A model generated the notes under the pieces. It saw only the letters and a list, made by a program, of their open reading frames with translations, had not been told where the DNA came from and made no database searches. Shown here in pieces: positions 42,120 to 63,448 of a stretch of DNA of 64,000 nucleotides; position 1 is the first letter of the stretch, and each line of letters opens with the position of its first letter. Origin of the DNA: Dimorphilus gyrociliatus (Eukaryota > Animalia > Annelida). The DNA lies in contig CAJFCJ010000006.1 of NCBI GenBank assembly GCA_904063045.1, forward strand, positions 4,356,408 to 4,420,407. Direction: 5' to 3'. The position numbers were made by a program, and so were the translations under genes.

Positions 42120-44084
42120 TTAGGTTATAGTTGCATCAACTAATTCTGGGGCCGGAAAAGCCATATTTTCAATAGCACCCGAATTTGTATCGATTGAAGT
42201 CGGAGGATTCTCGGTCTGGTTTGCTGCATTTTCTTCTTTATGAACTTGCAAATGCTTTTTCAGGTGCTGCTTTTGTCGAAATCCTTTTCTGCATACTTGG
42301 CAGGCAAACGGTTTTTCACCTACGTCGATTAAAAATGGCTTATAAAAGTCTTCTATCGAAAATCAATGGTGGCTTTACCTGTATGTATTCGAATGTGATC
42401 CTTAAGGTGACTCGAATGATTAAACGTCTTATTGCACTGTTTACATGCATACATTCTCAGCTGCCTTTGTGCGAGCTTGGTCTGTATGGGCGTAATTTTA
42501 GGTAATGTTATAGAAAAATTTAATAAAGATTCTTGAAATCCTAAGGGCACATCATCTAAAACATTTTTAATATGGTAACAAATATATGTGAAAAATATTT
42601 GACAATAAAGGAATAACGTGAATGTTTGAAAAGAGCAGGGAAGCACAACATGCTACATCTAAAAAATCGCAACAATCCGACGCGGAAAAAGACACGTGAC
42701 GCCCGAGGGCTAAAGGAACGTAAAAAATTACACACACACACACACGGCGCATGCATCACAAAAGCCCAAACCTGTGTCACTCTTCCTCAGCATTCTTTGA
42801 AACGGGGTAAAATATTAAGAGTTAGCTTAGTTAGTAAGAACCTCAACCTTTTGCTAATACCAGTTAAGCGATAAAGCCTTGTAATGCAAAAAAGTTATTT
42901 TTTTTAAAGTTTCTATACCAGCTTTTTAGGAGATGAGTTGTTTTTAGCTTAGTGTCTAAACTGACTATACTTACTTTTCCTGGGGACATTTTACGAAATC
43001 TCTCTATATCTTCTGGTGAACTGTCAGAGTTTAGCAGCTCCTATAATAAGAAAAAAAAATCATAATGTATACATATATGTATAATCTATATATATACCTA
43101 TATTTATTTATAACCGAAAGAAACATTACGGAAAAAACAGGAAAAACGAATTACTTACAGAGTTCGGATACACTTGTTGATTTCCAGTTCCATAGGTTGC
43201 TAAAAATTGCATGTTTTCTGGTGAATATTCAACGTCGTGCTCCATCGGCTCTTGATGAGTAGGCGTCATCGGTCGCCCCGCTGCCAGAGAAAGAGATAAA
43301 AAAAGAAAAATATATGTATTGCATTTCAAACGCATTCCACAGACGACTTACCTGGACCGTTAAGCTTGTCAATTGTATTGTCGTTAAAGTCGTGTCCAGG
43401 GAAAACTGGAGTCGAATTAAACGCGGCATAAACATTTGTCGAAGATTCTTCTTGTGTTTGTTCCTGGTCAGTCTTCATATTTTTCATTGGCATGGCCTTT
43501 CTTTTGCTGCTTCTAGCCTTAGCCGGTGTAGGTTTTTCAGAACTAGTATCAGATGAACAATCGTTCTTCGTGGGCGTTGCTTCCTCACTTTTATCATTTC
43601 CTTCTTTCTTTTCACTTAACTCTTCTACAACTTTGTCAATTGACTTCTTTTCTTTATTAGATTTGGGCGTGCCACGGGGCGGCGTCGATAAATCGCAAGG
43701 TTCACATTGCTCAACTTTCACTATTCGTTCACCACCCGATGGATCAGTGACGCTCACGTTCTGTGTGTAAAATCCTTCAGGAACGCCCGCATCCGTCACA
43801 GGATGCATATAAGAGTAGTCAGCCGGCATTCCGCTTAACAGAGAATAGGGCCCTTTACTGCGGGTCGGCGTTTGTTTATGCTTAGCCTTTCCGCTCTTAA
43901 TATCCTGGTTAATATTGATCAATATGACGTCGTCTTCCTTATTTGTTGTATGCAAAGTAAGGCCTATGAGAGCTTCAACCCTAAAATTGGGGAACATATC
44001 CGTAATCATATTAGAGCGACAGAGCGTTAGAAGCGTCTCGCTAAATAAATCCCTGAGTCTCTCCTTAGCTAGGGTGGTACTCAT
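42120..44084 (-). CDS. ZF gene A: unnamed N-terminal domain + disordered linker + 2 C2H2 fingers
   Basis: Exons 44084-43352, ~43281-43159, ~43040-42975, ~42483-42379, 42319-42120; [51 protein letters not shown]. Confidence 0.85.
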
Positions 44085-44863
44085 CCTTGCAGAGTGGGTA
44101 CGTTTTCGTCTGTGTAATGGTATTTTCTACCCGGAGCGTTACCTGAAACAAGAACGCCACCTATAGGGCAATAAAAGAAAAACAAAATCCGAAAACAAGG
44201 CGTCCTCTATATGCGGGGGCCGGCCGACAGCTAACAACATTCCAGAAGCGCCTTTCAAATAATACCGCCGCCGTTCTTTACTCATGAACGCTTTTCTATT
44301 CAAACGTTTCTATTCACTACCGAGTCACAGGGTCTTTAGGCCTAGCCGCTTCAAAATCGGCTCGGCATAGAAAAGAACACGCACCGCCCGTAACCGGCGA
44401 GAAGGCATTAAAGCGTTATCTACCTCTTATCTCTAGACGGTTAGCGGAGCGGGTCGAGCAAACTTTTTTGATGTGTTTGGGAGCTTTTTTAAGACGCCGG
44501 CCGGGGCTGCCTGCACACGGTTTGCAGGTGGCGTATCCAAACTAAGAAGGGGGTTTTCCACCTTCACTCTTTATATCTATCTCCCTGCGAGATAGACGGA
44601 AAATACGTATACGCCTACAAAGAAAAACGAAACTCTTTCCCGTCATAGAACAATAGATGATAGGCCTATAATTACAACATATTCACGCGTTCGAACGCGT
44701 ACAGCTAATTATGAATCCTGTCATTAATGACGCAAACGCCTAGCAAATAGTCAAATAGCAGCGTTTAGGCCACATCCGGCGGCGGAATAGACTTAGTACA
44801 CTCGGTTTTTTTTTCTTTTTTTCTATACACTCTACGTTCTTTTATAAATAATGGCCGACGGTT

Positions 44864-44866
<3 letters not shown>

Positions 44867-44894
<28 letters not shown>
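44867..44894. repeat. (AG)14 microsatellite / GAGA tract
   Basis: Direct reading; lies in the GC-richer upstream region of ZF gene A. Confidence 0.9.
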
Positions 44895-44906
<12 letters not shown>

Positions 44907-46324
44907 CGTCTAAACAGGAACTAAACAAAATAAAGCATATACGAGGAAAAGAACTTTCTTCGCCGCCTAATTAAATCGAGAAGCGTCGAGAACCCTCACG
45001 TATATTTATCAATCTTCCATGTTACGTAATCAGATCGTCAGTGTCAACATGACGTCGGTTATTCGTAATTAATCTAAAATAGTAAAAAATATCTAGTGCG
45101 TTTACTTACGAACGAATCGGCTAACCTCGTTACATAACAGAATAGAGTTTTAAGGCGTTCGGTTAGGCTTGATAAAGTACGCAATAAAAGAGAAAAAAGA
45201 GCGACGGCGGCTTTTTTTGGCAGAAAGAAAAATCGATGAAAAACAGCGCAGACGCACAGGCGTCGCTGCGAAACGAGGTCGGGACTTAGCCAAAAATGGG
45301 CGAGGCGAGTTCGGACAAGCTTCGTTTTCATCCAAACGCTTTGACAAACAACAGAGCGACAAACACAAAGAGAAAAACGTTCCATACAAACCGAGATATT
45401 TGATGACGCTATGCAGGAATGAACTTTGAACGAATGGTGCGCGACAGGCCAGCTATACGGTACCACTAAGGCCAAATTGGCCAATGCTGTCATCAATCAG
45501 CGTCAATATGGCGCCGTCTAAATTCTTTACAAACCTTCTTAGCGCAACACGTGTGCAGAAACGAATGACGCCACGTATACCGAATCGACGCTATCGCAGC
45601 TGTGCGCCAAAATCTAGGAGAGCGTCAAGTGACGCCGCCCTGTTTGTCAGTCAATTCCGACCTCTTATCGATATATATTTTTTACGTTATAAACGCTAAA
45701 TGATCCCCCGATAGTCTGTCGACTATTATCGATTACTAAATATCTTAATCTTACCAGCAATATCGAGAAAAACGCACGCTTTTAAACTTTCGCAAAGTTG
45801 CTCGCAGGCTGTATATCGCTCAGTGAATCGATTCCAGATTTGCATACGCGTTTAGTACACTGTTTTTGGTACGAATGCACAGTTTAACGCTGCAATTTAG
45901 CCTATTCGATTGCGAAGATTAGAAGTATTGTAAAAATTTTCTCGAATCGAACTGTTTTCACTTACAATTGAAAAAATACTTAGGCCTCTTTATCGCTCTA
46001 ACACGAGTTATCGCAAAAAATTCTTGAACGTCATAGCAAATCTTTCGCTTAAACTAGAGAAAAGATTAATATTTTTAGATTTGGATAATTTGCTGAACTT
46101 TTTCTTTCTTTATATGAACTTTCATTAGGCCCTTTTAAATCGCTTCTCATCGTAGTTCAATAGAGATAAAATGCTACAAATTAGAGTATAATATGAGACA
46201 TCCATTCATTAGCGGAGGTGGAGGTCATCCAAAATTCATTCAATTACAACACTATATGAAAGTAAATGTTTATTAACTGAACACATATATGTATATTTAT
46301 AAATTTACAAATGGATTTCTATTT

Positions 46325-47362
46325 TTATTGAAGTTTGTCGGATATCGTGTACTTTTCCACTTTTTTCTCGGGGTCATAAGGTTCCCATCTACTTGCCGGG
46401 AAAATATGCTTATTTCTCTCATACCAAGATCGTAGGCAAACTTTACCAGCGTGTGATTCATCTTTCTCCACCTTAGCATCATGTACCAGACGAACATCAT
46501 CGTGAACATCAAAGCAAAATAGTGGACCAGACTTTCCTCTAGCTTTCGTCACTATTAAGTCATAAAAAGTATAATGTTGAGGTATAATAGTATCTTCCTT
46601 TATATACATCAATTGGTCGACAGAGGCTGCTTTTAATTCATTGAATTCCAACCTTAAAACTTCAAGGCATTTTTGTAGGAAATGATGGATCGTTATTCCT
46701 TTCTTGACGGTTATTTCTCTTCGATGTCCCGAGCCATCCCAATAAGAATAAGTGATGTTTAAAAGTTCATTCTTAATTGTTTGTTGTTTTTCTTCCCATT
46801 CCTCTCTAAGTTTAGCTCGTAGTCTATTTTCCTCTTCTTCTCTATCTCGATCAGGCAGAAAACTTGTATCAACGGTAGGGTCTTTTCCAAATCTCTTTTT
46901 CTTTGGATCGATTTCTTTATCAGTGTTGTCTTCAACAAATTTCTCCTCCGGCTCCTCTATTTCGTCGTCTTCTCCGTAATCATCATCCTCATAAATGTCG
47001 AATGAAAGCTTTGTTTTATTCTCCTCCCTCTTTCTTTTTTTGATTGCTTTTTCTTCTTCCGCTTTTTCTTCAGCTAATCTGGCATCAGCGGCAGCCTGAG
47101 CTAATTGAGCTTCACGTTCTTTAACTGCACATTCTTGCTTCTTACGCATCTCATCAAGGGTTACTAGCCCGACAGTATTTGTTTTTAGTCTTTGTTCGAT
47201 AGCATCATAGTGAGAAGCAAATTTATCTATAATATTCCCTACATTGTTTTCTTCTTCAATTTTCTTTTTTCGTAATTCTAATTCTTCAACTTCTCTCTGA
47301 CGCCTTTTCAGGATATTTTTAGCACGTTGAGCCTCCTGAGCTGCTCCTTTGTACTGAGCCAT
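46325..47362 (-). CDS. FAM50A: FAM50A/XAP5 spliceosome-associated nuclear protein (intronless)
   Basis: [73 protein letters not shown]. Confidence 0.97.
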
Positions 47363-47648
47363 GTTTGAAAATATGAATTATTCTATCTGAGGGAGAAAAA
47401 TTAAAATATTGGAGTGGAAGAGTTGTTCAGGATAGTATACAATACTAACAACGGAAGCGGAAATTGCAGAACATACCGGGCTTTCACTAAGTTAAATAAT
47501 TTTCAAAATCTAGTCATTTCTTACTTAAAATTTGAATTTTGCACTCTTCTAATGAAAGGTATACCACCATAACATATCACTTATGTAACTATTGATTAAA
47601 TGTGATGTGCAAATTAAAACTTTTTAAAAAATCGCGCAGTTCTTTAAA

Positions 47649-49656
47649 ATGGCAACAACATCGCGGCTCATCAAAAAGCTGGATGAAGCAGTTATAAACC
47701 GTATAGCCGCCGGCGAAGTAATACAAGGTACGCCCAACCCATTTTTAGAGAATAAACGCTCACTTTCCCGTATTGACAGGGCCCTGGAATGCTGTTAAGG
47801 AAATGATAGAAAATTGCCTAGACGCCAAAGCTACTAATATATTAGTGGTCGTAAAACAGGGAGGCCTAAAGTTGATTCAGATTCAAGATAACGGGAAAGG
47901 CATTCATAAATGCGACATGGACGCTGTCTGCGAACGATTTGCTACAAGTAAATTAACCACGTTCGACGATTTGTCATCAATTTCCACTTATGGCTTTAGA
48001 GGGGAAGCTTTAGCAAGCATAAGTCACGTAGCACATATCACAATTACAAGTAAAACTGCTAATTCTCAATGCGCCTTCAAGGGTTCTTATTCTGACGGCA
48101 AATTAAAGGAGCCTGTTAAACCATGTGCAGGTACCCAAGGCACACAAATAACTGTTGAAGATTTATTCTACAATGTCCCTACAAGGAGGAAAGCTATAAA
48201 AAGTGCCACAGAAGAGTATAATAAATTATACGATGTGATCAGCAAATATGCTATTCACAATTCTAAAACTACTTTTACATTGAAAAAACATGGAGAAAAT
48301 GCTGCTATTCGCACTCAATCAGGTAGTACAGTCGATAATATTCAGAATATTTATGGAGGAGAAGTTAGTAGAGAACTGATAAAGGTAGAACATCACGACG
48401 AACAGTACAAATTTAAGGTACAAGGTCATGTTTCGAATGCCAACTATAACGCCAAAAAGTGTATACTTTTACTCTTCATCAATCATCGTCTTGTCGAGTC
48501 ATCAGCCTTGAAGAAAGCATTGGAAAGCGTTTACGCCAATTATCTCCCTAAAGGAAGCCACCCGTTCATGTATCTAAGTTTGGAAATTATACCTCAAAAT
48601 GTTGATGTTAATGTTCATCCAACAAAGCACGAAGTTCATTTTCTACATGAAGAAGCCATAATTGAATCTGTGCAAAGAGTTTTAGAAAACGTTCTTCTCG
48701 ATTCAAATAAAAGTAGGACTTTTCTAACGCAAGCTATTCTCCCCTCTTCGTTTGGCGTAAGCCAAAAAGAAGAAGAAAAACCAAAGGAAGTAGAAAAAAT
48801 ATATGATCATAATTTAGTGCGAACTGATAGTAAAGAAAGAAAATTAGAATCTTTCATCTCGTCACAGTCGTCAGATATTATAACCTCGGATCAAACATGT
48901 AATGGTACGAAGAAAGAACGAAAAGTGCATCTCAAGAGTGTTTTGAGCCTTCGTGCAGAAGTTGAAAGTGACTTGAACATCAATTTGAGAGAGATATTCA
49001 AGGAACATAAATTTGTTGGTTGTGTGGAGAGAAAATTTTCTTTAATGCAGCACGCGCAAGAACTTTATTTGGTGGACGTTTATGAATTAAGTCGAGAGCT
49101 ATTTTATCAGATTATGCTTTATGACTTTGGCAATTACGGCTCTATTTCTTTAGAGGAGCCTGCTAATATAATAGAATTAGCTAAAATAGCTTTAGACCTT
49201 CCAGAGATAGGCTGGACTATAGAAAATGGACCTAAAGTCGAATTGGCGCAACAGATCGATATTGTTCTTCGATCTCATGCTGAATTACTTTTTGATTATT
49301 TCTCATTGGAAATCGATAAAGAAGGAAATATAATATCACTGCCTTATTTATTGGAGAACTATATACCACCACTCCAAGGTCTGCCTGTGTATATTTTGAG
49401 ATTGGCGTCAGACGTTGACTGGACGACAGAGAAGGAGTGTTTTGAAGGAGTATGCAAGGAAACTAGTGACTTTTATGCAATGGGTAATGGCTATGAGCAC
49501 TTAGATCAACATCAAGAAAAAGATTGGAGGTGGATGACTGAATATACTCTTTTTCCAAATTTCAGAAACACATTACTACCAACAAACAGTATGGCAAATC
49601 ATCTTATCAAATTGGCAAGCCTACCAGATTTATATAAAGTATTTGAAAGATGTTAA
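47649..49656 (+). CDS. MLH1: DNA mismatch repair protein MLH1 (single intron 47728-47779)
   Basis: NRIAAGEVIQ, EMIENCLDA, TYGFRGEALASIS, VDVNVHPTKHEVHFL, C-terminal DLYKVFERC. Confidence 0.98.
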
Positions 49657-50009
49657 TAGTCTCTTTTATTTTCAAGTGTACAAATCACAAAATTGTTTAC
49701 CTTTTTTCCAAGCATAATCGGCAAATTTTGATATAAAAAGTCTAGTTCAATTTAAAATGAATCAATAATCTTATCTGAACAGCATACATACAACAGACAG
49801 ATAAGTGCTTTGCAGTTTGAATATTGATTGAACACTCCTATCTAAACGTTCAATAACTCGACCTACTTTTAATACATAAATCTATCAGGGGAATTGTAAA
49901 CTTCTAAAACTACATACATGCAAGTACAAGACGTATAAGTAGTTTAAAAAAACATTTAGTAGAAAATTATGCATAGGTTTTAAAGGGTCAATCAGTTCAT
50001 GATACTGAA

Positions 50010-50372
50010 TCAGACGTTAGCTTGCTCAGTGAGAAATTGTCGAATCTTGTGTAGTAGTTCTTTCTTTACGGTATCCGGAACAAGTGCACGACCTTTCGGC
50101 GTCACCTCTGCGACCAAATCATCCACTGATACCGTTTCTATTCCACGTTCTCTAATAACTTGTTTACAATAAGCTCGTACCTTCTCTCTCCAGCCACATT
50201 CGTCAAGCCTAGATATATTTTTAACAATTATTATAAAATCGCTCGATTGTTTTGAAACAACAATACAAAATACCAACCTCATGCGAAGTAATCTCTTTAG
50301 TTTTTCCTTTTCACCAGTTTCTTCCAATTTTTGATTAATCGTTTCACGGATTATAAGCTCTCTATCACCCAT
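50010..50372 (-). CDS. ENY2: ENY2/Sus1 (SAGA DUB and TREX-2 subunit), one 69-bp intron
   Basis: [56 protein letters not shown]; intron 50277-50209. Confidence 0.95.
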
Positions 50373-51215
50373 TTTTCTATTCAAGTTATTTAATAACTGA
50401 AAAAAGGTTTATTCGTAAATAAAAAAAATAATTACACAGCTGCGCTATTCGATTCGAGAATTGCCCCTATTGATATAATCTTGCATATTTCAATTTTTAG
50501 AAAAAATCTAGTAAAATAATTTAATGCTTTTACTTGATTACTAAGTAATCAACCGATTCTTATTAGTAAAAATATTACTGCGTCTCAGATAATTAAAAAT
50601 CAAATCTACTTACGGTCCCGCGTGCCAAATATTTCTCGTAAAAAACGAACTTGTTGTGTACTCGATTTCGTAGTGAGCGCGCCAAGTTTTTTCCCCCTTT
50701 ACAATATTGCAGTTTAAATTCGGCGCGACACGAATCGAATACGCACCCCGCTACAGCTCTTTGCAGTTCGAACCGAACATCTTTACGTTATCGTCGTTTT
50801 CTGTCGTTTTCGCGCTTTGACTAGCCGATTTTTGCAGTTTTGGTAAGCGATTATCTAATCACTCAACGTTTATAGTGTGAATAGCAACTTTTTGCTGTAC
50901 GAAATAGTAAATAATCGTCGTTTGTTTTGCAGTATTGCGCTGCGACAGCAGCAGGTATAGTGCGCCATTGTGCAGCTCCCGCCCAACGGTCGCGTTCTTT
51001 AAAAAATTTCTCCCGAAAGTATTACAGACGTCCCATTAATATCATTATTCAAATCAACAGCTGCTTATAAAAGTATTGCAGCTGTTTCCACCGTGCCTTG
51101 CAGCTGCCGCATGTTGAATACCGCGTTCACGATCCTCGTTCTATTCAACTGTAACACTGCAATTTATACTGCAATTCTGTTCATTACAGGCTGTTTCCCA
51201 ACCCGCATTCAAATT

Positions 51216-52459
51216 ATGGATTCCAAAGTTCTCGAAGAGGTAATGAAATAATTATTAGTATTTTTGTACTAGGCGACTACAGTGAACATTTGTACGTATA
51301 CAGATCGAACAAAAGGCCAAGATGAAAATTAACAAGCAGCACCTACGAAAACTCGTTACGGATCATTTAACGATGGCCTGTAAAAGCGCTTTGCCTGACG
51401 AAAGAATGTTTACGGTTGAAGCGCTTGTCGGAATAACCTTGTCATCGAAGGAAGTTATGCTAATTAACGTTAAAGAAAACGTTTCAAACCAACTGACCAA
51501 GAATGTCGCAAAAGACAAACGCAATATGTCTTCGTCGGTCGACGACGTGTCAGAGGCGCTTAAGAGGAAATTCGAACAGTACGTTTATTTATTCTCGGCC
51601 CCCCCAACTTAAAACAGACTTGGTTGTTTTTTCTTTCAGTGAACCGGCTAAAACGTCGTCGAAACGTAAATCGGACAAGATAAAGAGTGAACGATCTGGT
51701 TCACCAGTAGTTAAACGCTCTAGGGTATCTCTGCCGCCCCAGCACCGAATCAGGAATTCTTATGACCCCCCTGAATTGGATGCTTTAAGGAAATTAGCGA
51801 CACCTAATGAAGCTTTAACAGGATGGTATTCACAGGTTTTACCACAATCTTTGGTCCTACCTCCATTTCTTAATGGATCATTCCAGGTATGTTCTCTTTC
51901 TAGGATAAAGATATACTAGATAGCGATATCTAGTATATCTGTGTTTTTCCCCTCATTGTTGTTGTTTTGTTCTTTTGCAATGTCGGTCTAAAAAGAACCG
52001 AGACATTGTTAAACGTTGTGAAAACTTGTCTGAAACAAACCAGAATGCTGCCCGCCCTTCTCTCCAACATCCTATGTTCACCTCGAGGCAATATCCGGGT
52101 CTTTCAGAGGATGATTCTTCCCCAAGAAACCAGTCCCCGCAACCTGACGATGATAAATCAGCTGAAGCTTTGGATATGACAAAACCTGATGACTATGAAG
52201 AAACGGACGTGAATATGAATAAGACAACGCCATTGAAACTTTTGGCCCAAACCGTAATTGAACAGGTGATATTCCTTTCCATGACCCCTCCATACCGTCC
52301 TTTCACTGAAAAAATAGCGGTATGGAGGGTGAGTTACACTCCAGGAATTTTAATATTTTAATACGATTTATTTTGGTTTTCAAAAAAAAGACTACGCGAT
52401 CGAACGGCGGCGAAGAGATCAAGAGGAGTTCGTCATGCGAGCCGATTGTCAACAAGCAG
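51216..52459 (+). CDS. ZF gene B common 5' coding exons: unnamed N-terminal domain + linker
   Basis: Exons 51216-51239, 51304-51578, 51640-51886, 51996-52265, 52391-52459 join in frame; last donor CAG|GTGTGT is phase 0. Upstream non-coding exons suggested by donors at ~50842 and ~50954. Confidence 0.8.
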
Positions 52460-53892
52460 GTGTGTTCCTCGGCCTTTGCCGAAGCGATAATAGCTTTGGA
52501 CGCGAATTTTTGCAGTAAACAATAGGCAGGTGACTAATCTAGACATAAAAATAAAAAGAGAGCGATAAGTATTTATTATCTATCTATGACTGCAAAGATT
52601 CACGTTTAAACACGTTATCTGATTTTAGTGGCTATATGCATCGGCATGCAATATAGAGTAGCCGCTTGATTTGCTTTTCAAATTGGACTCGGCTGCATTA
52701 AAATTGCTATAGAATTTAACAATAGCGGCGGCTGGTGGCGGCGGTGGCGGCAGTTTTTTTTTACAAGAGAGAGCAGCAGCCTGCACCAATTTATACAGCA
52801 ATGGCCTATTTGACAGTGTGCAGCTGTAAAGATTGCTGAAGGGCGGGGCGAGATTTTCTTCTCTCTTGCAATCTATCTACGACTCTATCTCTCTTTTCCG
52901 TATTTATTTCTCTTTTATTCCTGCCTGCCACGCCGTCTGTCCCTCAGCAATTTTGTCAGTATAGGGGGCAAAGAGAGGGTAAAAATATTTAAATGAAGCA
53001 ATTACTGTTTAATATAGATAAAGTGTAATTTTTACCCTTCTTCCTTATTGTATATAACTTATATACAAAGAATCATAAATATCTCTTTGCCGCCCCTCTT
53101 TTTCTTTATCTGTATCACTCTCTATCTTTTATATATAGAGAGCGAACAAAAAGAAAAAGAGAAAAAAAATTCCAGCATGTCGGTGAAAGTGCGGTGGCCT
53201 GCGTTGCGTTCTATTCATTTCTCATTTTACAAAAGCATGCCTTCTCCCTTTACGGTTTTTTTTATTTATTGCGCATCTTGTGGACGTTTTTACGTTGTTC
53301 TTTTGTTCTCTCGAAATTCTTTAAACCTACATTGTTTTTATTATTATTTTCTTGTTTATTTATTTATTTATCTTTAGTTTCCTAACCATAACTCCTCACT
53401 ATTCTTCTTCTTCTCCCTTTCTCATTATTACTTTTTGTCGACCTTTGTTGTTGTTTTTGTTTGTTGTTTTTTACAACATTCGCATATGCAGTTGCGCATT
53501 TAACATTCCGCGTGTTTGTGGTATATATCCATATACATACTTGCGTACATGTATTGTATGTTTATTCAAAATATGTGTTTTACGTAAATACAAACACATC
53601 AATGTAGCGATATGCATACATAATAGGTACATGTTATATATGCATGCATTTAAATACATAAATATGTACAGTTATTGTGTATATATTTATACGCACATTT
53701 TCCTATCGCCTACATTTATATACATCTAAGCGTATAGAGAGACATATATATATATACATACAATGCCTAAACTATGCTGAATAGGAAAAGTGGAACAGAG
53801 AGCACGCGTAGCGTGCTGCTTTCGAACTTTGTACGCGACACATCAGTCACACTGCTGCATGCCTTGGCCCAGTGCCAGCGTCACTGCAAAAA

Positions 53893-53929
53893 GGGCGGGG
53901 TGTTTACGAGGGAAGGGAAAGGGACAGGG
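53893..53929 (+). other. G-quadruplex-forming motif in the long gene B intron
   Basis: GGGCGGGG...GGGAAGGGAAAGGGACAGGG fits G3N1-7 x4, with two extra G-runs just upstream. Confidence 0.55.
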
Positions 53930-54406
53930 TACGCGGTATATTAAAACTATTTGTGAAAGTAACTTGTTATTTATTATGACTCTTAGAATGGGCTGGAGGG
54001 TTAACGCTGTAAGAGTGGGTTTCAAATTTATTACGTTTGGCAATTAAAGAGGGCTATTCTGATTACATTTTGGAAAGTAGATCGGCGACATCTACAGGCC
54101 TACACAGACAAATCGGCCCACATGACTGAGAAGGGAGAAGAGGGTGTAGCGTTCGAAGGTTAGGGGTGTCGATGTTTCCCTCTATTTTTTTGCTGTTCTT
54201 TGCTTACATATTTTGCATGGCAGTGTGTTTATGGTCCGTAACCATACGGTGTTTATTTCATGCATAACTGATTACTCGACTGCACCTGTTGGATTGGCAG
54301 TGTTTCCTTTTCATTATATATTCCCCCCTCTTTATTTCTGCCTTTTTGTCGTACTGTACCCGCGCTGCGGGCTGGTTGTCTTTAAGGCGTTCGTTTTGTC
54401 GACCAG

Positions 54407-54637
54407 GTGCGTCCAGGATGTAGGAATGAGTTGAGTCGTCGACGACGTAACGTGCGATGTTCAGAATGCGGTCGGGTATTTTTTGATAACAATACTTTGA
54501 GGAGGCACGCTCTTATACATAAAGGAATCAAACCATTCAATTGTTCGAAATGCAGCAAAACTTTCCGACAAGCCGGCTGCTTACAACGCCACCTCGCCAC
54601 GCACAAAGATGTCAACAACGCTTCACGTAGATGCTAG
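54407..54637 (+). CDS. ZF cassette B1 (terminal exon, 2 C2H2 fingers)
   Basis: Acceptor CAG|GTG, phase 0; CSECGRVFFDNNTLRRHALIH-KGIKPF-NCSKCSKTFRQAGCLQRHLATH; own stop at 54637. Confidence 0.85.
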   Translation: MRPGCRNELSRRRRNVRCSECGRVFFDNNTLRRHALIHKGIKPFNCSKCSKTFRQAGCLQRHLATHKDVNNASRRC

Positions 54638-54776
54638 AAATAATAACTTCAAAAAAATGCAAAAAACTATAAACTATTAACCCTTCTCTTAAATAATCTA
54701 ACGCTTTCAATGTTAATTCGCATAAACTGAACCAAACGCAAACAAACCAAAAACAAACACTTGACCGTATATTTAG

Positions 54777-55241
54777 AATGAGAACGACAGCGAATCGGAA
54801 GGACTTTCGGGAGATTTGACAAACATTTGCCCTCAGTGTGGAGTTACTTTATCAACTAATACCGCCTTAAAACGGCACATGCTCATCCATGACGGCGTGA
54901 AACCCTACAATTGCACAATCTGCGAGAAGAAGTTCAGACAGAAAACGGACCTGCAGCGCCATCTTTGTACACATACTAAGAAGTATCCATTTAGCTGCCC
55001 GCTCTGTGATTTCAAGTGCGTTGCAAGACATTCATTAAAGGCTCATGGCAGAAACAAGCATAACATGCCGGATCTCCACTATCAGGTGGTTCCGGCTAGT
55101 TTGGATGAACTGGTACCAATGACTGATTATAATTTCGAAGCGGGGCAAATAAAGAAAGAGGATGATGAGGAAGAGTCTGTACTTCCATCTGATCAAATTG
55201 ACTCGAATCCGGAGACAGATTCGGCTCAACATCACATATGA
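54777..55241 (+). CDS. ZF cassette B2 (terminal exon, 3 C2H2 fingers + acidic tail)
   Basis: Acceptor TAG|AAT, phase 0; CPQC..HMLIH, CTIC..HLCTH, CPLC..HGRNKH; stop at 55241. Confidence 0.88.
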   Translation, partial: NENDSESEGLSGDLTNICPQCGVTLSTNTALKRHMLIHDGVKPYNCTICEKKFRQKTDLQRHLCTHTKKYPFSCPLCDFKCVARHSLKAHGRNKHNMPDLHYQVVPASLDELVPMTDYNFEAGQIKKEDDEEESVLPSDQIDSNPETDSAQHHI

Positions 55242-56578
55242 TACGGTTGATTATTTCTGAAGAAGGGATGGAAAAGGGGGAATAAGAGAATTATAGATCT
55301 GGTCAAGTTCCTTAGCCGTTAGTCTTATTATCTTTAAAATTATCTCAAGGTTTATTCACATTAAAAAAAAAATGTTTTACAAATTGACTTTGGCATAGTC
55401 ACCCTAAGTGCCTTGGTAAACTTTGCAAACAGTAAAAATTTGAAAAAAAATTTAGTGATAAAAAATTAGTATAATATGGCTGCAAATTATTATTTTTTTA
55501 ACGTTTTGTGATATATTATGTTTCATAAACAAATGTACATAATTGGTCGTAGTGATAAAACGTTATTCTGCACCTTACACGTGACTTTTCGCCATTTTCT
55601 CATTTACTTTTTAGACGTATGTTAATCCATCAGTTAGAAACGCTTGTTAACTTATGCAAATTGTGCAATATTCCTTCCAAAGTTACAGTTCTTTTACAAC
55701 TATGCATTTTTTTTGCGTGTTCATTTTAATCTGGATATAAATGATTCTATATACATAAAGAAAATACTTGTGAAATTGTATACCAACATGTATGCCTACT
55801 CGTATTCTTATTCCACATCAAATGATTATTCTTTGATTTTTGATTAATAAAAGTTATTGAAATATTAAAGTACACCATATTAAAAACTTTTCAATACTAC
55901 TCGCCATCTATTATCCAAAAAATTGACCGATAGATGGCATTTCATTACAATCTTAACCGTTTCGTTCCGTAAACCGCATGAGGTAAGTGGGTTGGTGTGT
56001 TTTTGTTCCATTTTCTCGTAACTTAAGCCTACTCGGCTACTGTTAATTAAATTAGCGATTAACTAAGATAACAAACTTTCGTAAGACTTGTTCAAAGCAA
56101 CTTTTTTATGTTTGATTCGTGATGAAAAATGACTTTTTTGACGGTAAACCAGAGCTACAAACTTTTCAAGATGGCGGCTCAAGTTGGCGCCTTCACAAAC
56201 GGGCCTTTGGCCGGTGACAAAGCAAACACTACTGACACGCTTTACTCAGTGCCAATTCTCTTTTAGTTTAAGTTTGTGATATATTTTGTGGCAAACATTA
56301 CTTTTCGACGCCATAAACAATATAACTTTTAGTTTGCTGAGCGGTCTGTCTCAATCACCTAAAATATATTGCGCAGGTAAACCATTCATCATTGTTCAGT
56401 TGGCCTTCTTTCTTACTCGCGTTTTGAATAAGTCTTGGCTTGTTTGCACGCAATAGGCGCCGAATAGGATTTGTTTATCGACGCAATTTTTTTCTCAGGC
56501 CTATATAGTGCTCAAGTTTACTTGTTCAATACGTATCTACATACTTGTTTGGCCTGTTATCTAGGTACACTCACGGCC

Positions 56579-58776
56579 ATGAAGAACATTCCGACAAATT
56601 CTTCTATACAAAGTTCTTTTATTGAACTTGTTCGAAAATTTTGCTCCAAGGTGTTTGCTGACGAGGACTGCCATGTCCAAGGTCTTCTAGCTTTTACCCT
56701 ACCAAAAGAAAGAGTAAGATTTCATTATTTCTAATGTATTTTAATTTGAATAACAAGCATCTTCTAATTGGTTTCAAAAATGTACTTCCTATAATTTTCT
56801 AGGTCGTTCTGGTAAATGTATCACAGGAGATAAAGAATTTACAGACTCCCGTATCGAACTTCTCCGATAAGATTCCGATTAGCAACATTACAAAAATCGA
56901 ACCTAAAACGATTAATCAACCGATTATCATTCATCCGATTCCCGTTTTGGACAGCCTATCCTCTTTACGTCTCCCAAGCTCATCATCTTCCAGCATATCA
57001 ACAAAATCCAAGTAGATACCTCAGTTTTTATGCGCCTAAAAATACTTATAGACCCTTGTAATTTTCTTAAGTGTTATCGACTCGATCCAACCTACCACAA
57101 ATTCTGTCAAGAATAGACGAAAAGGACAGCCTAAGAGACGAAAATCAAATGATTCACCGGCTGTGTTCGAAGTTCCATCACAAGTTCCTCTGCAAAGTAG
57201 TTACAATGCCAAAAGAACCAAAGTTGAGGCGGACAGCAATGCCATTGTGGTTGGTAGTGAAAGCGTTTCGTTTTATCAGTTGTTCCTAATCGGTAGTTCT
57301 GTTTGATTTTAGAGTAGAGAGAGTACTTCGGATTCAGATGGATGGGACAATATTGATTCAAGGAAGGAGGTAAGCATCATTTTACAACATTACAATTGGC
57401 AGAGGTGGTTAACTACTGTATAAAAATTCCCTTCCTTCCCTCAATCCCTTAAAAAATTTTTAATAATTCCAATAATTTCGCTTTTTAATATAACTTTTCT
57501 TTCTTTCACGCGAAACTGATAGAGTTATAAATCGAGGATATGGTAAGTCTCTAACAAGGAATGCTTAAGAAATATTAACTTATTCCTATATAATAACCGT
57601 TTTTATAATAAAAACTATATATATACAATATCTTTTTTATTACCATTTTGCATCTCTGTAAAAAAGTCTCACTGTAATCTCATCTATATATACTATATAT
57701 ACATATGCATGGTTTATTTTTTACTTACCCTTTACTTTTTATATATATATACATATATCAGTTATAATCAATATTTTGGTTCCTGCTTACTTATATTTTT
57801 TATTGAAACTATTATTCTAAAGCATGATCGAATAGAAGAATTTTGTAATTGTTTATAATTTGACGATGTTACTAACTAGAAGTCATAATACAGGTTTCCG
57901 TAGAAGATGAACTCTATAAGAAAATAACGAAAACAGACAGCAATAGCAATCTAATCGCTTGGCCGAGCCCACAAATCGACGAATCAGATGGGAGTTCGAC
58001 GTTGAATGATTCGAACACTGAATCAATATTTGCTCCATCTCCTAAAATGGAACCAATTCTAAATGAGAGAGGTAGTCGCGATCTTTGTCCCGGGGCATTT
58101 CCTAAATCAAATTTTTTTCATTAATATTGCATTCTTCCAGGCCGAGTGGAATGTCAAATTTGCCAGAAGGAATTATACGATAAATCGTCGTTAAATCATC
58201 ACATGTTGATTCATAAAGGTATAAAACCATTCAAGTGCCCCATTTGTCACACAACTTACAGACAAAAGATAACTATGCAGGTATAGTCCAAAGATTAAGA
58301 AAAAAGTCTATTATTTATAAAATAACATAAAAACAATACAGCGTCATATGGCTACTCATTTTAATGTGGATAAAAAAGCTTGCGAATTGTGCGGTTACAA
58401 GGACAAGTCCCAGAGAAAAGTGTTCATGCACCGGGTGAAAGAACATGGTCTTCCTATATCTGCAAATACATTTTCAGATCCAATGCCAGCAGATACGGCC
58501 ATGACCGTGCGACAAACGACATATCCAGTAGCAATGCCGGAAAAGTTATCCTTACAGATACGTTATCCAGACGGTAGACACGATATCGATATCACTATAC
58601 CAGATTACCCAGGTTCAGAAGAAATGCGTAACAAGTTTGCAGAAAAAGAGTCCCAGGCAGATGAAAGTGATCCAGAACAGATGGTCATTGATTTAAAAAA
58701 TTCAGATCGCACACCACCAGCAAGGGTTCCCATACGCATGCAAACTAGATCAGGAGAGAAAAAAAGCACTGGGTAA
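56579..58776 (+). CDS. ZF gene C: divergent copy of the N-terminal domain + linker + 3 C2H2 fingers
   Basis: Exons 56579-56713, 56803-~57011, ~57071-57250, 57313-57370, 57894-~58071, 58141-58280, ~58342-58776; CQICQKELYDKSSLNHHMLIH-KGIKPF-KCPIC..RHMATH, CELC..HRVKEH. Confidence 0.82.
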
Positions 58777-59401
58777 AAAATAATTTCAAAAGAAAACATT
58801 GATGAAAAGAGGAAAACAAGAAAAATAGAAAAAAATATATTTTTTTAAAATAACTTTTGTTTTGCAAAGGAAGTTTAAGAATTGCATTATATTTTTTAAG
58901 AGTTTCTTTTGCTCATATACTTCGTTTCTTTACAACTTTTTTTGGCGCCGTATTATGTTGATTTCTACATTCCAATTTTATTTTAACAACATTCCCAGAT
59001 TACATTAAGTATATGCATTTGATTTTTTTGCATTCGATGTATCTGATTCGTGCGTGTCGTAACAGATGTTTTCAGTTTTGCTTATTATTTTTTTTGCATG
59101 TATTGTATGTACTGTCAATAAAGAGGTCGTACCATAGATAATATATTATAGATATTCGATTTTTTTGTAATGCCCTTTGATGAATGTGTTGCATACAAAT
59201 AACGTAAGCAAAAACAGATTTGTTTGTCAGGCGAACGATAAAGCTGGTTCTCAAACTTTTTAAGAGCGAATTAAAGCAGACATGTCTATGCTCATATATT
59301 ACCATGATCATTTGAAACAAAAAAAAAAAAATGCAGTAAAATTTTTAGGAATGCAGAAATATTTAGGCTCACAACGTGAAAGACAGAAATTGAAAAAAAA
59401 T

Positions 59402-60292
59402 TCACTCTACAGCAGACTGGAATACATGTTTTTCATGATGCTGTAAAGCATGCTTTCGTAATTGAATCTTCTGACGAAAAGACGCATAACAAACGCTGCA
59501 GATATATGGCTTTATACCACGATGAACTAACATATGTCGATTTAAAGTTGATTTGTCGTACAACGTTCGAAAACAGATCGGACATTGGCGAACTTTGGTC
59601 GGATCCGCTGGTTTTGCAGGCGTTCTCCCTCGCCTTGTTGGTTCAACGTTTATTTGAGGGAACCATAAGCCGGCATCCAGTGAAAAATTTGGCGGGAAAA
59701 CATCAGTTTCCGGTTCCTTTTTTGAATTTTCTTCTTCGATGTCAATTTTTCGATCGGTATTAATAGAGCGTTGTGTTCGGAGTTTATGGCAGATGGAAAA
59801 CTTTGTAGTATTAGCTAAAGGCGTATCGGTTTCTGCCTAGAAACAAACATTAATGGGGTGAAATAGATGGCGCTTTGACATTCCAATAACTATACGAATT
59901 TTAGAATATATCTAACAGTTCTCTGTAATTACATTTAATTAGACGGCGGCGGTGGCATTTTTAATTAAAGCCTATTCCCTAATTAATTATAGCCAAAGAC
60001 CATTGTTTTTTTTATATATACATACATTTTCCACATCTAAATCAGTCGATTCGAATTCGTTTGGCGGGAGAACATTTGGCTTCTTAATAATTCTTTTAGG
60101 ATGCGAGCTTTTCCTTCTGCAAACAAACCGATCGATGAAAGATGGAATCAGTAAAACGTACAGAGAAAAAAGCTTAAACGCCTACAAAACGCTTGTCCAT
60201 AAATCGATAAAATATAAAATCGCAATTTTCTTGTATTCCAAAGAATGACAACTCACCTCTTCGTTCCTGGCATCTTCAAATATTGTATTCAT
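59402..60292 (-). CDS. ZF cassette D3 (59836-59402, 2 C2H2 fingers) with optional 12-codon leader exon 60292-60257
   Basis: Missing from ORF track. Acceptor CTAG|GCA, phase 0, 435 bp open: CPICFRTLYDKSTLNRHMLVH-RGIKPY-ICSVCYASFRQKIQLRKHALQHH. Leader MNTIFEDARNEE|GTGAGT is phase 0. Confidence 0.85.
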
Positions 60293-60869
60293 GTGATTGG
60301 AGTGTCGGTTAATTAATCATAAGTGTCATTTTAAAATTGACTTCATTTAAATATTTTGTTCTTTTTCGTTATAAGAAATTCAGCCCTGGTGTTTTACAAC
60401 AGAATCTATCCAACGATTATAAATATATATGACAAAATTTTAATTAGCAAGTAATACTAATGAAACAAAAGCGAAACTGAGTTAATCCTTGTTTAGCATA
60501 ATTGACTAGGGCGCCTCTGCGCCAACATTTTCTACACCGTTAGATAATCGATTCGAAGGCAGCGAATCGAATACTGCACAAATTTTCTCGAGCTGCAATT
60601 CGCGCCAGTTTTTGAATATAATTTGACTTTATTTTCTGTATTTTATTGTTAAAATTTACGACTAGTAAACACTTGGCACAACGAAGAAAATAAAAATAGC
60701 GCAAAAAATAAAATGATAAAAAATCAGAAAGGAAAGAACACAGCAGCTCTTTTTAAAGGGTCAACAGCTTAGTAATGCCTTTTAAAACTTATAAATAATC
60801 GGGAATGCATCAATCATAGAAAAATCAGAATAGCACGACACGAAGGAGAAATTAATTGGAAAATGTTTT

Positions 60870-61251
60870 TCATTCTGAATCTTCAGCAGTATCCTCGGCA
60901 AAATTGGCCGAAACTATGTAAGAAGAACGTGACTTGGACGCTCGTGGAACGTAATCCGTAAATATACCGTGATATCTTCTTAAGTGACGTCGTAGACTAC
61001 TTTTCTGCGTGAAATGTTGAGAACAATGCGGACATTGGTACGGTCGTTCGCCTGGGCGTTGGTTTAATTATAACTATTATTAGAATTAACAATTTTAAAT
61101 AAAGAGTTATACGCCTACCAGTGTGAACTCGGTAATGAACCACTAGCTTCGAATGTGCGTCCCAAGATTTTTCACAAACTGGACAAATTGTTACAGAAGG
61201 ATCGTCTGGCAGTGGGGGAACGGTGTCTTCTTCGACGGATCTCCGTCTTCT
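60870..61251 (-). CDS. ZF cassette D2 (exons 61251-61119 and 61051-60870, 2 C2H2 fingers)
   Basis: Missing from ORF track. Acceptor TTTTACAG|AGA, phase 0; [63 protein letters not shown]...EDSE*. Confidence 0.85.
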
Positions 61252-62524
61252 CTGTAAAAAAGAACACAGTAATTTTACAATTAAGCAAACATGATAAGCC
61301 TATCAGAGTACGAATTGACGTCAATCAGGGCGTGGTATGAAAAAAAAAGTAGACAGACTAGATTCGGTTTGAAAAAGTCATAACGATCACAAACTGATTA
61401 CTGAAGCTTTCATTTTCAAAAAGGAACCATCTAACCAATGACTCACCCCAAACCCAATGAATATAGAATTTGTCTGTAAATGATTTTTAACCGTTCGGTT
61501 AATAAGACAAACAAGAGGCACATGAGCGACCTTTGAACACGTTTTTTATTCGTTTTTTTCAATTGACGTAATTATACGTGACAAACAATTTTACAAACAA
61601 CTACCCTATGCACAAAGCACCTTAACAACATCATGAACGCATTTGTGGGTTTTTCAAACACGCTATATACAATTAATTCTTTTTTTTACACAATTGAAAT
61701 TCTTTAAAACATTTCATTGAGCAATTTCAATTGTGTTTACAAAAAGAGAACATTCTCCTTTTTACATGAACGCGTCTCTCCTGAACGACACAATTTGTTT
61801 CTTTCATGGCAGAATAAACAAGAACAAAATACTGTTTTTGTCTTAATAAATCTATACACCAAAAAAAAGAAAAGTTATACATATAAATAATGTATATAGA
61901 CATGTATATAAGTATATAAATATATATATATATATATTTATATAAATATATATAATTAGTTTTCTGAACGCGCAGCTATCGATGTGAAAAACATTGTTTT
62001 TTTTTTGGCAGTCTGCTAAGAAATGTTTGAATACTGGAAACTTGGCACAAAAATTTTTACAGAAAAAACTACACTGATTTTTATACGTTAGGTTTTAAAA
62101 AGCACATTTACTCTTAAACACGCTCACAAACACGCAAAAAAGAAGTCGAATAATGTGTTTTTTTCGGTGCAGGTCTAAATTTTTTAACATGTTTTCACCG
62201 ACTTTTGTTTGTCATGTCACTTTTTGATACCGTTTTTAAATAAACTTTAAAAAAAATGAAAAAAAAAGGATAAAAGTTAACGTAAAACAATAAATTATGC
62301 ATGAAAAACTTTGAACGCTAAAACGAAAGGGAACGCATTGCAGTTTTAAAAAAAAATAAAAAGTTTTTCTTTTTAAACCCAAAAAAATCTAGCTAGAAAA
62401 GAGAAGGAAAAAATTGAACATGTCTTGAAGTCTTGGATTTTTTTTCTTGTACTTTCGTTTGATCTGCAAATGTAAAAAAAGAAAAAGATAATTGATGTGC
62501 AACTCTCCCCAAAATCAAAAAATT

Positions 62525-62866
62525 CTATCCTTGACTTTTGAAAGAAGGGAAAACTAACCACTGCAAAGATTCTCCGTGATTATTCTTCATATGCCTCTTA
62601 AGGTGAGACCTGGTTATACATTGATGGCCACAGGTGGCGCAACTGTACCTCCTATCCGGCCTGTGCGTCCACATGTGCGTCTTCAAATTGCCTTTCTGTG
62701 AAAACGTCTTTCCACAAATCTCGCAGGAAAACGGCCTTGCACCAGTATGCGTAATGTAATGCCGATTCAAAGCCGATCGTAGGCCTATCATCTTGCCGCA
62801 TATCGGGCAATTCGGACTGTTGTAGTCGTCCGGAAGTGGTGGTACGGTCGACTTGTGACGGCCGCC
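62525..62866 (-). CDS. ZF cassette D1 (3 C2H2 fingers)
   Basis: Acceptor TTTTTGCAG|GGC, phase 0; TVPPLPDDYNSPNCPICGK..HYITH-TGARPF-SCEIC..HMWTH..CATC..HMKNNH. The 3' end may be spliced differently. Confidence 0.88.
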   Translation of the reverse strand, partial: GGRHKSTVPPLPDDYNSPNCPICGKMIGLRSALNRHYITHTGARPFSCEICGKTFSQKGNLKTHMWTHRPDRRYSCATCGHQCITRSHLKRHMKNNHGESLQWLVFPSFKSQG

Positions 62867-63448
62867 CTGCAAAAACACACCAAGCAATATGGCCGTGTTA
62901 TTCAATAGTAATTGCTTTTGTTTATAGAAAATACTGTTCTCTCTTTTATTCGTACTGTTTTTTTCTTCGTTGTTTTTAAGTATATATATATTTTTTTAAC
63001 TGTGTGCCGTGTGAACATAATTAATGATTATTCGTTCCGTCGTTAGTGTATTTTCATGCGGTTTTGTTAGATAAATATATATTATTATATATGTTAATAG
63101 ATATATATATAGATATATATATATATTTATATATATATATTGAGACTATACAGCCATATTTTCTTGGCGGTTGCATGCAGGGTGGTTTAGTGAAAGGGAA
63201 TCGTACCGATTCAGACGAAGAACTGAAAATTACGGATTAAAGTTCTAACAGGATTGAATATTGGTCAAAATTTATTCCATTGTGTGTTCTCTTTGACCAA
63301 TATTATTTAGCCGCATTAGATCGAAAATCCGTTTATTTGGACGTTTATATTTCGCGAACACTTTCATTTATTATAATAAACATAAGATTTTTAGATAGAT
63401 TATAAAAAAAATACCCCAATTGGTAAAAAAGGTTTAGAAAGTTACAGA

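What the first reader, a model, noticed from the sequence alone, without database searches (positions are those of the whole stretch)
43890..56840. Unnamed ~55-aa N-terminal domain shared by three ZF genes (KRAB/ZAD/SCAN-like role?)
Seen: A LRDLFSETLLTLCRSNM..FRVEALIGLTLH..VILININQDI (44084-~43900); B LRKLVTDHLTMACKSAL..FTVEALVGITLS..VMLINVKENV (51340-51485); C IQSSFIELVRKFCSKVF..CHVQGLLAFTLP..VVLVNVSQEI (56600-56835). Consensus: amphipathic helix ending in Cys, then VE(A/G)L(I/V)G(I/L)TL and V(I/M/V)L(I/V)N(I/V), suggesting a helix plus beta-hairpin. It matches none of BTB, ZAD, SCAN or KRAB as I know them. I recall similar segments in predicted mollusc and annelid proteins but no named family. 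Inference: a lineage-specific dimerisation or co-repressor module.
Basis: partly seen in the sequence, partly recalled or inferred. Interest (0 to 1): 0.82.

Follow-up and report, generated by a model that had tools for sequence, protein, structure and literature searches.

The report
Unnamed annelid transcription-factor N-terminal domain
Three neighbouring zinc-finger genes of this worm genome start with the same small, strongly conserved, so far unnamed protein domain, which belongs to a large family found in labelled sequences only from annelids, sits in front of several different kinds of DNA-binding domains, and probably does the pairing job that BTB or ZAD domains do in insects.

Summary
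Copies A (44084-43890, minus) and B (51322-51495) match a profile built only from outside sequences at E 6e-18 and 6e-24. Copy C (56579-56713 plus 56803-56835, split by a GT..AG phase-0 intron) is a marginal, divergent member, and its first exon has no RNA support.

A profile search of 1.84 billion proteins found 862 cluster representatives. Almost all carry the domain at residue 1-60. No Pfam model, PDB sequence or PDB fold matches it.

Every member with an organism name is annelid (Helobdella, Dimorphilus; one ESM Atlas cluster). Mollusc members were not seen.

The domain is joined to C2H2 fingers, BEN, FLYWCH or a homeodomain. RNA contigs show gene B's common front half spliced to either of two alternative zinc-finger end exons, as in the fly gene lola.

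Best reading: a lineage-specific self-association or cofactor module of transcription factors, analogous but unrelated to the TTK-type BTB domain. The function is inferred, not tested.

The scan reported the same kind of locus elsewhere in this genome (s1-080734).

The parts
43890..44084 (-). N-domain copy A (residues 1-65 of gene A)
   Evidence: Translation. Outside-only family HMM gives E 5.6e-18. A 92% identical protein, P0001, exists in another data set.
43352..44084 (-). Gene A exon 1 (ATG at 44084, GTAAGT donor after 43352)
   Evidence: ORF, sequence. The splice site is predicted only; no RNA was laid on gene A.
42120..43280 (-). Gene A downstream exons as predicted: 43280-43159, 43040-42975, 42481-42379 (finger 1), 42319 to about 42120 (finger 2 and stop)
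   Evidence: C2H2 motifs at 42383-42445 and 42240-42302. Canonical AG/GT sites and continuous frames. Predicted only, not checked with RNA.
51216..51239 (+). Gene B 5' exon with an in-frame ATG (MDSKVLEE), spliced to 51304
   Evidence: The loose ends of RNA contigs in three runs carry exactly this sequence ahead of 51302/51304. Sequence.
51322..51495 (+). N-domain copy B
   Evidence: Translation. Outside-only HMM gives E 6.5e-24. AlphaFold model has pLDDT 87.6, with helix 5-23 and strands 29-39 and 45-55. The four differences in a related strain or species that lie here are all synonymous.
51304..52459 (+). Gene B common region: exons 51304-51578, 51640-51886, 52044-52265, 52391-52459, ending ...IVNKQ before a GT donor
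   Evidence: GT..AG joints appear in RNA contigs of runs X1, X2 and X3. Frame check and 23 synonymous against 2 non-synonymous differences.
54407..54637 (+). Gene B alternative end exon 1 (2 C2H2 fingers and stop)
   Evidence: Joint 52459>54407 in runs X2 and X3. Pfam zf-C2H2 E 1.6e-11.
54777..55241 (+). Gene B alternative end exon 2 (3 C2H2 fingers and stop)
   Evidence: Joint 52459>54777 in runs X1, X2 and X3. Pfam zf-C2H2 E 3.1e-13.
56579..56713 (+). Gene C exon 1: helix and first strand of a divergent N-domain copy
   Evidence: Translation. Outside-only HMM gives E 0.26, rank 3 of 2,702 pieces. No RNA contig covers it.
56803..57011 (+). Gene C exon 2; its first 11 codons (56803-56835) form the second strand of the domain
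   Evidence: HMM positions 47-64, E 2.6, rank 5, collinear with exon 1. The exon is present in RNA contigs and joined to 57072.
57072..58776 (+). Rest of gene C: exon 57072-57249 and an exon starting at 57313 (both seen in RNA), then predicted finger exons at about 58140-58290 and 58340-58776 (3 C2H2, the second split by an intron)
   Evidence: Joints and loose end. C2H2 motifs at 58152-58214 and 58381-58446. Frames. The finger exons were outside the stretch laid with reads.

Best explanation
A, B and (as a divergent member) C carry an uncurated protein domain of about 55-60 residues. It forms the extreme N-terminus of a large family of transcription factors that has been seen so far only in annelids. 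The domain is one amphipathic helix followed by a long two-stranded beta-hairpin. I read it as a protein-protein interaction module, most likely for self-association (homo- or hetero-oligomers among paralogues). Such pairing would bring together DNA-binding ends that each have only 2-3 fingers or a single BEN, FLYWCH or homeodomain. The module is encoded in a common 5' part of the gene that ends at a phase-0 CAG|GT donor and is spliced to alternative 3' exons encoding the DNA-binding part. What is shown: the family exists, the domain is N-terminal, the fold prediction is confident, the domain has several kinds of partner, and gene B uses two alternative ends. What is inferred: that it self-associates, and that its role matches that of the insect TTK-type BTB domain or ZAD.
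For: Family: 862 representatives at E<=1e-3. 229 of the 270 domain-bearing proteins I fetched have the domain starting within 5 residues of Met1. In a 40-sequence alignment Cys, Gly and Thr are invariant; over 277 copies they sit at 0.99-1.0. Fold: pLDDT 87.6, helix plus hairpin. Conserved hydrophobic residues lie on both faces of the second strand (V-F-L-V) and on a broad stripe of the helix, more than a 55-residue monomer can bury (this is inference). Partners: C2H2 (P0082, P0211, P0222, P0223, P0249, P0273), BEN (Helobdella T1FJQ8), FLYWCH (P0266) and homeodomain (P0270, E 2.5e-20, six independent contigs). Seven natural proteins carry two copies in tandem. Alternative ends: gene B uses 52459>54407 or 52459>54777. 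Dimorphilus CDS4066 and CDS4065 share 198 residues ending ..KQ, then one reads through and the other continues into 3 fingers. P0268/P0269 relate to P0270 in the same way. Selection: 23 synonymous against 2 non-synonymous differences in the B common region. In arthropods the TTK-type BTB is likewise joined to 1-2 fingers, FLYWCH or HTH domains, and it is absent from annelids (PMC11426971).
Against: There is no direct evidence of self-association. The fold of a natural two-copy protein was unusable (pLDDT 39.6), and no multimer prediction was available. Hydrophobic surfaces could equally bind a cofactor. C is only marginally significant and its first exon is not seen in RNA. Most family ORFs in the databases are first exons or read-through products, so the share of members that really end in a DNA-binding domain is unknown.
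Confidence: 0.6

Rival explanations
1. The domain is an effector module that recruits a co-repressor or co-activator (as KRAB recruits TRIM28) and does not self-associate.
For: The positional and partner evidence is the same as for the best explanation. The conserved surface could be a docking site. The linkers often carry a psi-K-(D/E)-E motif of the SUMO-site type, in 33 of 52 long members, which is typical of repression domains.
Against: A helix plus a two-stranded hairpin with hydrophobic residues on both sheet faces is unlikely to be stable alone. Tandem two-copy members fit pairing. The two roles do not exclude each other.
Confidence: 0.25
2. It is a very diverged member of a known family, such as a degenerate BTB, half of a winged helix (STN1 C-terminal type) or a MADS-like alpha-beta-beta unit.
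Confidence: 0.06
3. The VEAL(V/I) core is a Sin3-interaction helix of the KLF10/KLF11 type (AVEALV).
For: Only a five-residue resemblance that I recalled from memory.
Against: The segment is predicted as a beta-strand with block pLDDT 94-97. The conserved pattern extends over 55 residues, not one helix.
Confidence: 0.02
4. For copy C only: the resemblance is chance or a decaying relic, and gene C does not carry a working domain.
For: E is 0.26 and 2.6 for the two exons. An A+B-only profile does not find exon 1. The near-invariant Gly, Asp and Glu are lost. No RNA contig covers exon 1, and one contig starts exactly at exon 2.
Against: The two pieces rank 3rd and 5th of 2,702. They are collinear on the profile and joined by a clean phase-0 GT..AG intron. 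They sit at the start of a gene with the same build as A and B, in the same cluster. The invariant Cys and Thr are kept. Gly-to-Ala also occurs in clear members (P0006, P0081, P0135).
Confidence: 0.2

Closest known systems
TTK-type BTB domain of arthropod transcription factors (lola, mod(mdg4), fruitless, tramtrack)
   Same: Both are N-terminal modules restricted to one phylum. Both are joined to only 1-3 C2H2 fingers, FLYWCH or helix-turn-helix type domains. Both are encoded in common 5' exons that are spliced to alternative 3' exons carrying the DNA-binding part (PMC11426971).
   Different: There is no sequence or fold relation. This domain is 55 residues of helix plus hairpin, against about 120 residues of BTB fold. 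Oligomerisation is not shown here. Trans-splicing was not tested. BEN and homeodomain partners occur here.
ZAD (zinc-finger-associated domain) of insects
   Same: Both are N-terminal, lineage-specific, found in many paralogues often in clusters, and sit in front of C2H2 fingers. ZAD is a dimerisation module (PMC7913770, listed).
   Different: ZAD binds zinc through four cysteines. This domain has a single conserved cysteine and a different predicted fold.
KRAB and SCAN domains of vertebrate zinc-finger proteins
   Same: Both are N-terminal accessory domains of expanded zinc-finger families.
   Different: There is no Pfam match. SCAN is all-helical. Vertebrate proteins carry long finger arrays, whereas these carry 2-4 fingers.
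MADS box (SRF/MEF2) alpha-beta-beta unit, and the helix-plus-wing part of winged-helix domains (Pfam STN1_2)
   Same: Both have the same order of secondary structure, a helix and then a hairpin. The MADS unit dimerises through the hairpins.

Membership tests
The unnamed annelid N-domain family itself | Significant match to a profile built from members outside this window | tested here: met
   B scores E 6.5e-24 and A scores E 5.6e-18. C is only marginal (E 0.26 and 2.6 for its two exons).
The unnamed annelid N-domain family itself | Domain at the very N-terminus, with the conserved Cys at the end of the helix and G-I-T-L in strand 1 | tested here: met
   A and B have all of these. C keeps Cys and Thr but has Ala in place of Gly. 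229 of 270 members start within 5 residues of Met1.
BTB/POZ | Match to Pfam BTB, and a fold of about 95-120 residues with the BTB core | tested here: not met
   No BTB hit even at E<=10. The model is 55 residues of helix plus hairpin. No BTB chain appears in the Foldseek or VIA lists.
ZAD | Four conserved cysteines that bind one zinc ion | tested here: not met
   There is only one conserved cysteine in the domain, and no Pfam zf-AD hit.
SCAN / KRAB | Pfam match; an all-helical SCAN fold or a KRAB A-box | tested here: not met
   No Pfam hits. Two thirds of the domain is beta-strand.
STN1 C-terminal winged helix (PF09170) | Score above the Pfam gathering threshold (27.2 bits), and a winged-helix fold | tested here: inconclusive
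   8 of 40 members hit at E 0.0013-0.1, with 13-18 bits in the four hits whose scores were listed, all below threshold. No winged-helix or STN1 chain appears in the fold lists.
MADS box | Pfam SRF-TF match; a basic N-terminal helix that contacts DNA | tested here: not met
lola / mod(mdg4)-type locus | Common 5' exons joined to alternative 3' exons that encode different DNA-binding ends | tested here: met
   In gene B, 52459 joins to 54407 (2 fingers) or to 54777 (3 fingers) in RNA contigs of 2-3 runs.
lola / mod(mdg4)-type locus | Trans-splicing of ends that are transcribed separately | not tested
   Contigs cannot show it. The minus-strand finger cassettes at 59.4-63.2 kb were not studied here.
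Self-associating TF module (function class) | Forms homo- or hetero-oligomers | tested here: inconclusive
   The natural two-copy protein folded with pLDDT 39.6 and is unusable. No multimer tool was available.

The most novel reading that the evidence does not exclude
Annelids evolved, on a previously undescribed small fold, their own counterpart of the arthropod TTK-BTB system. In this reading, one oligomerising N-terminal module heads hundreds of genes and is spliced to interchangeable DNA-binding end exons (C2H2 pairs, FLYWCH, BEN, homeodomain). That would be a convergent way to build large combinatorial sets of transcription factors.
Probability: 0.5. Interest if true: 0.85.

Novelty: new variant of a known kind. 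Interest (0 to 1): 0.72.

Why it matters
Lineage-specific N-terminal modules (KRAB, SCAN, ZAD, TTK-BTB) shaped the large transcription-factor expansions of vertebrates and insects. Nothing comparable has been named for annelids or other spiralians.

This family is large (at least 862 clusters at 50% identity), very well conserved, confidently folded, and has no Pfam model, no solved relative and no paper that I could find. It gives a concrete entry point for several things:
- a Pfam or InterPro family;
- a small domain suited to structural work;
- a test of whether lola-like isoform systems arose independently outside arthropods.

It would also improve annotation of annelid genomes. At present these genes appear as anonymous CDSs, or as truncated ORFs that read through the donor site.

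Tried and rejected
- The word-index search with A found only a 92% identical copy. The two ESM Atlas feature searches found nothing.
- NCBIfam is a prokaryotic library and gave only noise.
- PDB sequence searches with profiles A1 and A2 found nothing below E 0.25.
- I folded a natural two-copy member (P0004:1-160, 7-row alignment) to see a pseudo-dimer interface. The model had pLDDT 39.6 and is unusable. MAFFT put all single-domain rows on one copy, so I could not make a deeper alignment for both copies.
- I rejected the Sin3-interaction-helix idea, because the segment is predicted as a strand.
- An A+B-only profile did not recover C exon 1.
- I looked for downstream DNA-binding exons near a relative (L002). 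None lies within 10 kb, which is not informative.
- I could not name the species of the window. The exact-product look-up of the XAP5 ORF was not on record, and the contig holding B's ORF carries only a run accession.
- Three paper searches for an existing description of the domain, one of them for its motif strings, found none. The other two supplied only the ZAD and TTK-BTB comparison papers.
Full report
**1. The observation**

The three peptides are present as described.
- A is the start of a 252-codon ORF on the minus strand, with its ATG at 44084.
- B starts at 51322.
- C starts at 56579 and is interrupted after ...TLPKER (56713) by an 89-nt GT..AG intron. Exon 2 (56803) begins VVLVNVSQEIK, in phase.

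Within the window, A and B recognise each other at E 5e-5 among 2,702 six-frame pieces. C exon 1 alone does not reach significance, either pairwise or with an A+B profile.

**2. Relatives elsewhere**

I searched a profile of the three copies (A1) against 1.84 billion representative proteins.
- It found 862 proteins at E<=1e-3, and 13 at E<=1e-10.
- In almost all of the 150 listed, the match is at residues 1-60 of the protein.
- The consensus is very clear: M.LK.DQERVK.LL.ETITLLCKNGL.Y..EFSVE(A/G)L(I/L)GITLD..DVFLVNIKET.
- Cys, Gly and Thr are invariant in a 40-sequence alignment and stand at 0.99-1.0 over 277 copies.

I then built an HMM from 38 outside members only and ran it back on the window. 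B scored E 6.5e-24 and A scored E 5.6e-18. The next best pieces included C exon 1 (rank 3, E 0.26, profile positions 9-47) and C exon 2 (rank 5, E 2.6, positions 47-64). Two neighbouring, collinear, splice-compatible pieces among the top five of 2,702 are unlikely to arise by chance; my rough estimate is 1e-3. C is nonetheless a divergent copy: it has Gly>Ala, Asp>Pro and Glu>Gln at near-invariant sites.

**3. Is it a known family?**

No.
- Pfam-A gave no hit on A, B or C at E<=10, apart from noise.
- It gave none on the N-terminal part of 10 full-length relatives, nor on 52 long relatives.
- The only recurring item is a sub-threshold match to STN1_2, a winged-helix region, in 8 of 40 members (best E 0.0013, below the 27.2-bit cut-off).
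- The family profile finds no PDB sequence.

**4. Fold**

With the 40-row alignment A2, AlphaFold2 models B residues 1-70 at mean pLDDT 87.6. The blocks covering residues 11-50 reach 94-97. The model has helix 5-23, strand 29-39 and strand 45-55.
- Foldseek against PDB gives nothing at E<=1e-3. MEF2 MADS boxes appear at TM 0.25.
- In the ESM Atlas the best match (TM 0.69 over 64 residues) is an unnamed eukaryotic cluster of 66 members whose known phyla are Annelida.

**5. Who has it, and what is it joined to?**

Every member that carries an organism name is annelid:
- Helobdella robusta T1FJQ8 / HELRODRAFT_183479;
- Dimorphilus gyrociliatus DgyrCDS12650/12651 and DgyrCDS4065/4066.

Earlier notes of this scan say the window's genome is itself D. 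gyrociliatus. I could not confirm that. If it is true, the Dimorphilus proteins are paralogues in the same genome, and Helobdella plus the Atlas cluster are the independent taxa. I saw no mollusc member, but most hits (ENA, Logan, JGI) have no label, so the range remains open.

The domain sits in front of four kinds of DNA-binding domain:
- 2-4 C2H2 fingers (P0082, P0095, P0108, P0132, P0148, P0211, P0222, P0223, P0249, P0273);
- a BEN domain (T1FJQ8, E 8e-9);
- a FLYWCH domain (P0266, E 1e-7);
- a homeodomain (P0270, E 2.5e-20, seen on six separate contigs).

Seven proteins carry two copies in tandem.

**6. Gene structure**

RNA contigs from four runs were laid on 51301-57300. For gene B they show the following.
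- A 5' exon ends at 51239 and is joined to 51304.
- The common exons are 51304-51578, 51640-51886, 52044-52265 and 52391-52459.
- From 52459 there are two alternative joints. One goes to 54407, an end exon with 2 fingers and a stop (runs X2, X3). The other goes to 54777, an end exon with 3 fingers and a stop (runs X1, X2, X3).
- The short side of these two joints is only 24-28 letters, but they recur in independent runs and have GT..AG ends.

I joined the B exons only inside a local script, to check frames and codon positions. The variant carried by runs X2/X3 differs from the window at 25 listed coding positions of the common region. Of these, 23 are synonymous, including all four that lie in the domain. 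This confirms the frame and shows purifying selection.

The common region ends ...NKQ just before the GT donor. The same signature recurs across the family.
- 26 of 52 long, mostly transcript-derived ORFs contain QV within their last 45 residues, followed by junk. About 17% would be expected by chance.
- DgyrCDS4066 and DgyrCDS4065 share 198 residues ending ..TKQ. One then reads into the intron, and the other continues into three fingers.
- P0268/P0269 and P0270 share a common part ending ..YNQ. P0270 then continues into the homeodomain.

So many database 'proteins' of this family are the common part read through its last donor. The usual build is a common N-terminal part plus exchangeable DNA-binding ends.

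Gene A is predicted from canonical sites only and has 5 exons and 2 fingers. For gene C, exons 2-4 are joined in RNA, but exon 1 has no cover, and one contig starts exactly at 56803. Its three fingers lie outside the stretch I could lay.

**7. Mechanism**

Four things are shown: the domain is N-terminal, it is modular with respect to the DNA-binding domain, it is under selection, and it is confidently folded.

The function is inferred. The conserved hydrophobic residues cover both faces of strand 2 (V45 F46 L47 V48 .. I50) and a broad stripe of the helix (positions 8, 11, 12, 16, 18, 19, 20, 24). A 55-residue helix-hairpin cannot bury all of these on its own, so it most likely packs against another copy or a partner protein. 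Taken with the tandem two-copy members and the short DNA-binding ends (2-3 fingers recognise too few bases to be specific alone), the best reading is a self-association module. The closest functional parallel is the arthropod TTK-type BTB domain. That domain is restricted to arthropods, was searched for and not found in annelids, and is joined to 1-2 fingers, FLYWCH or HTH domains in loci such as lola and mod(mdg4) (PMC11426971). A cofactor-docking role of the KRAB kind is the main rival, and the two roles are compatible. My attempt to read an interface from a natural two-copy protein failed (pLDDT 39.6).

**8. Novelty**

This is a new domain family, with no model, no solved relative and no paper found. 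It fills a known role class: lineage-specific N-terminal modules of transcription factors. The scan has already reported a lola-like locus with 'an unrelated, unnamed front domain' elsewhere in this genome (s1-080734) and several other copies (s1-084854, s1-084116, s1-084656, s1-081753). I did not check whether those are the same domain. The lola/mod(mdg4) wording first reached me from note s1-080369. The evidence given here is my own.

**9. Limits**
- The taxonomic range is not settled.
- Oligomerisation is not tested.
- C is not proven as a member.
- The gene A and C models are only partly supported by RNA.

Noticed in passing
window 51216-51239 and 51304-51321: Gene B has an upstream 5' exon with an in-frame ATG (MDSKVLEE), spliced to 51304. 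This would add 14 residues ahead of the Met at which family members normally start. Which start is used is unknown.
   Followed up: partly
window 52457-52461; P0026/P0273, P0268-P0270, and 26 of 52 long relatives: The common part of family genes ends at a phase-0 CAG|GT donor. Many database ORFs are this common part read into the intron ('...QV' followed by junk), so they look like finger-less proteins.
   Followed up: yes
P0003-P0008, P0155: Seven natural proteins carry two N-domain copies in tandem, with linkers of about 5-50 residues.
   Followed up: partly
L003, L004, L005 (ENA sample ERZ25084518); P0175-P0210: 36 clusters of family members are about 87% identical to each other over their full length. 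Three that I checked lie on different large contigs of one assembly sample. The similarity starts about 90 nt upstream of the ATG and runs more than 1 kb past the ORF. One locus has a reverse-transcriptase ORF 8 kb upstream. This is either a recent burst of paralogues or a mixed sample.
   Followed up: partly
linker regions of relatives (alignment A3); window about 43715-43726 (gene A, residues VKVE): A psi-K-(D/E)-E motif (SUMO-site type, often IKEE) occurs in the linker of 33 of 52 long relatives. Gene A has VKVE.
   Followed up: no
window 46328-47362 (-), 47773-49653 (+), 50013-50384 (-): Between genes A and B lie long single ORFs for XAP5/FAM50 (E 9e-53), MLH1 (Mlh1_C E 1e-81; the ORF lacks the first part of the ATPase domain) and ENY2 (E 2e-29, matched in two stretches, so it probably has a small in-frame intron). 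The region is compact and intron-poor.
   Followed up: partly
window 58215-58350: The middle zinc finger of gene C is split by an intron: its Cys pair is in one exon and its His pair in the next.
   Followed up: no
window 59400-63250 (-): Six more C2H2 motifs lie on the minus strand without an N-domain in the window. Earlier notes place a further N-domain copy about 1 kb beyond the window's end, so these may be alternative ends of that gene.
   Followed up: no
window 54404-54804: In runs X2 and X3 one contig runs unbroken from the first alternative end exon through the acceptor of the second (54777). The 3' UTR of isoform 1 therefore overlaps the start of end exon 2.
   Followed up: no
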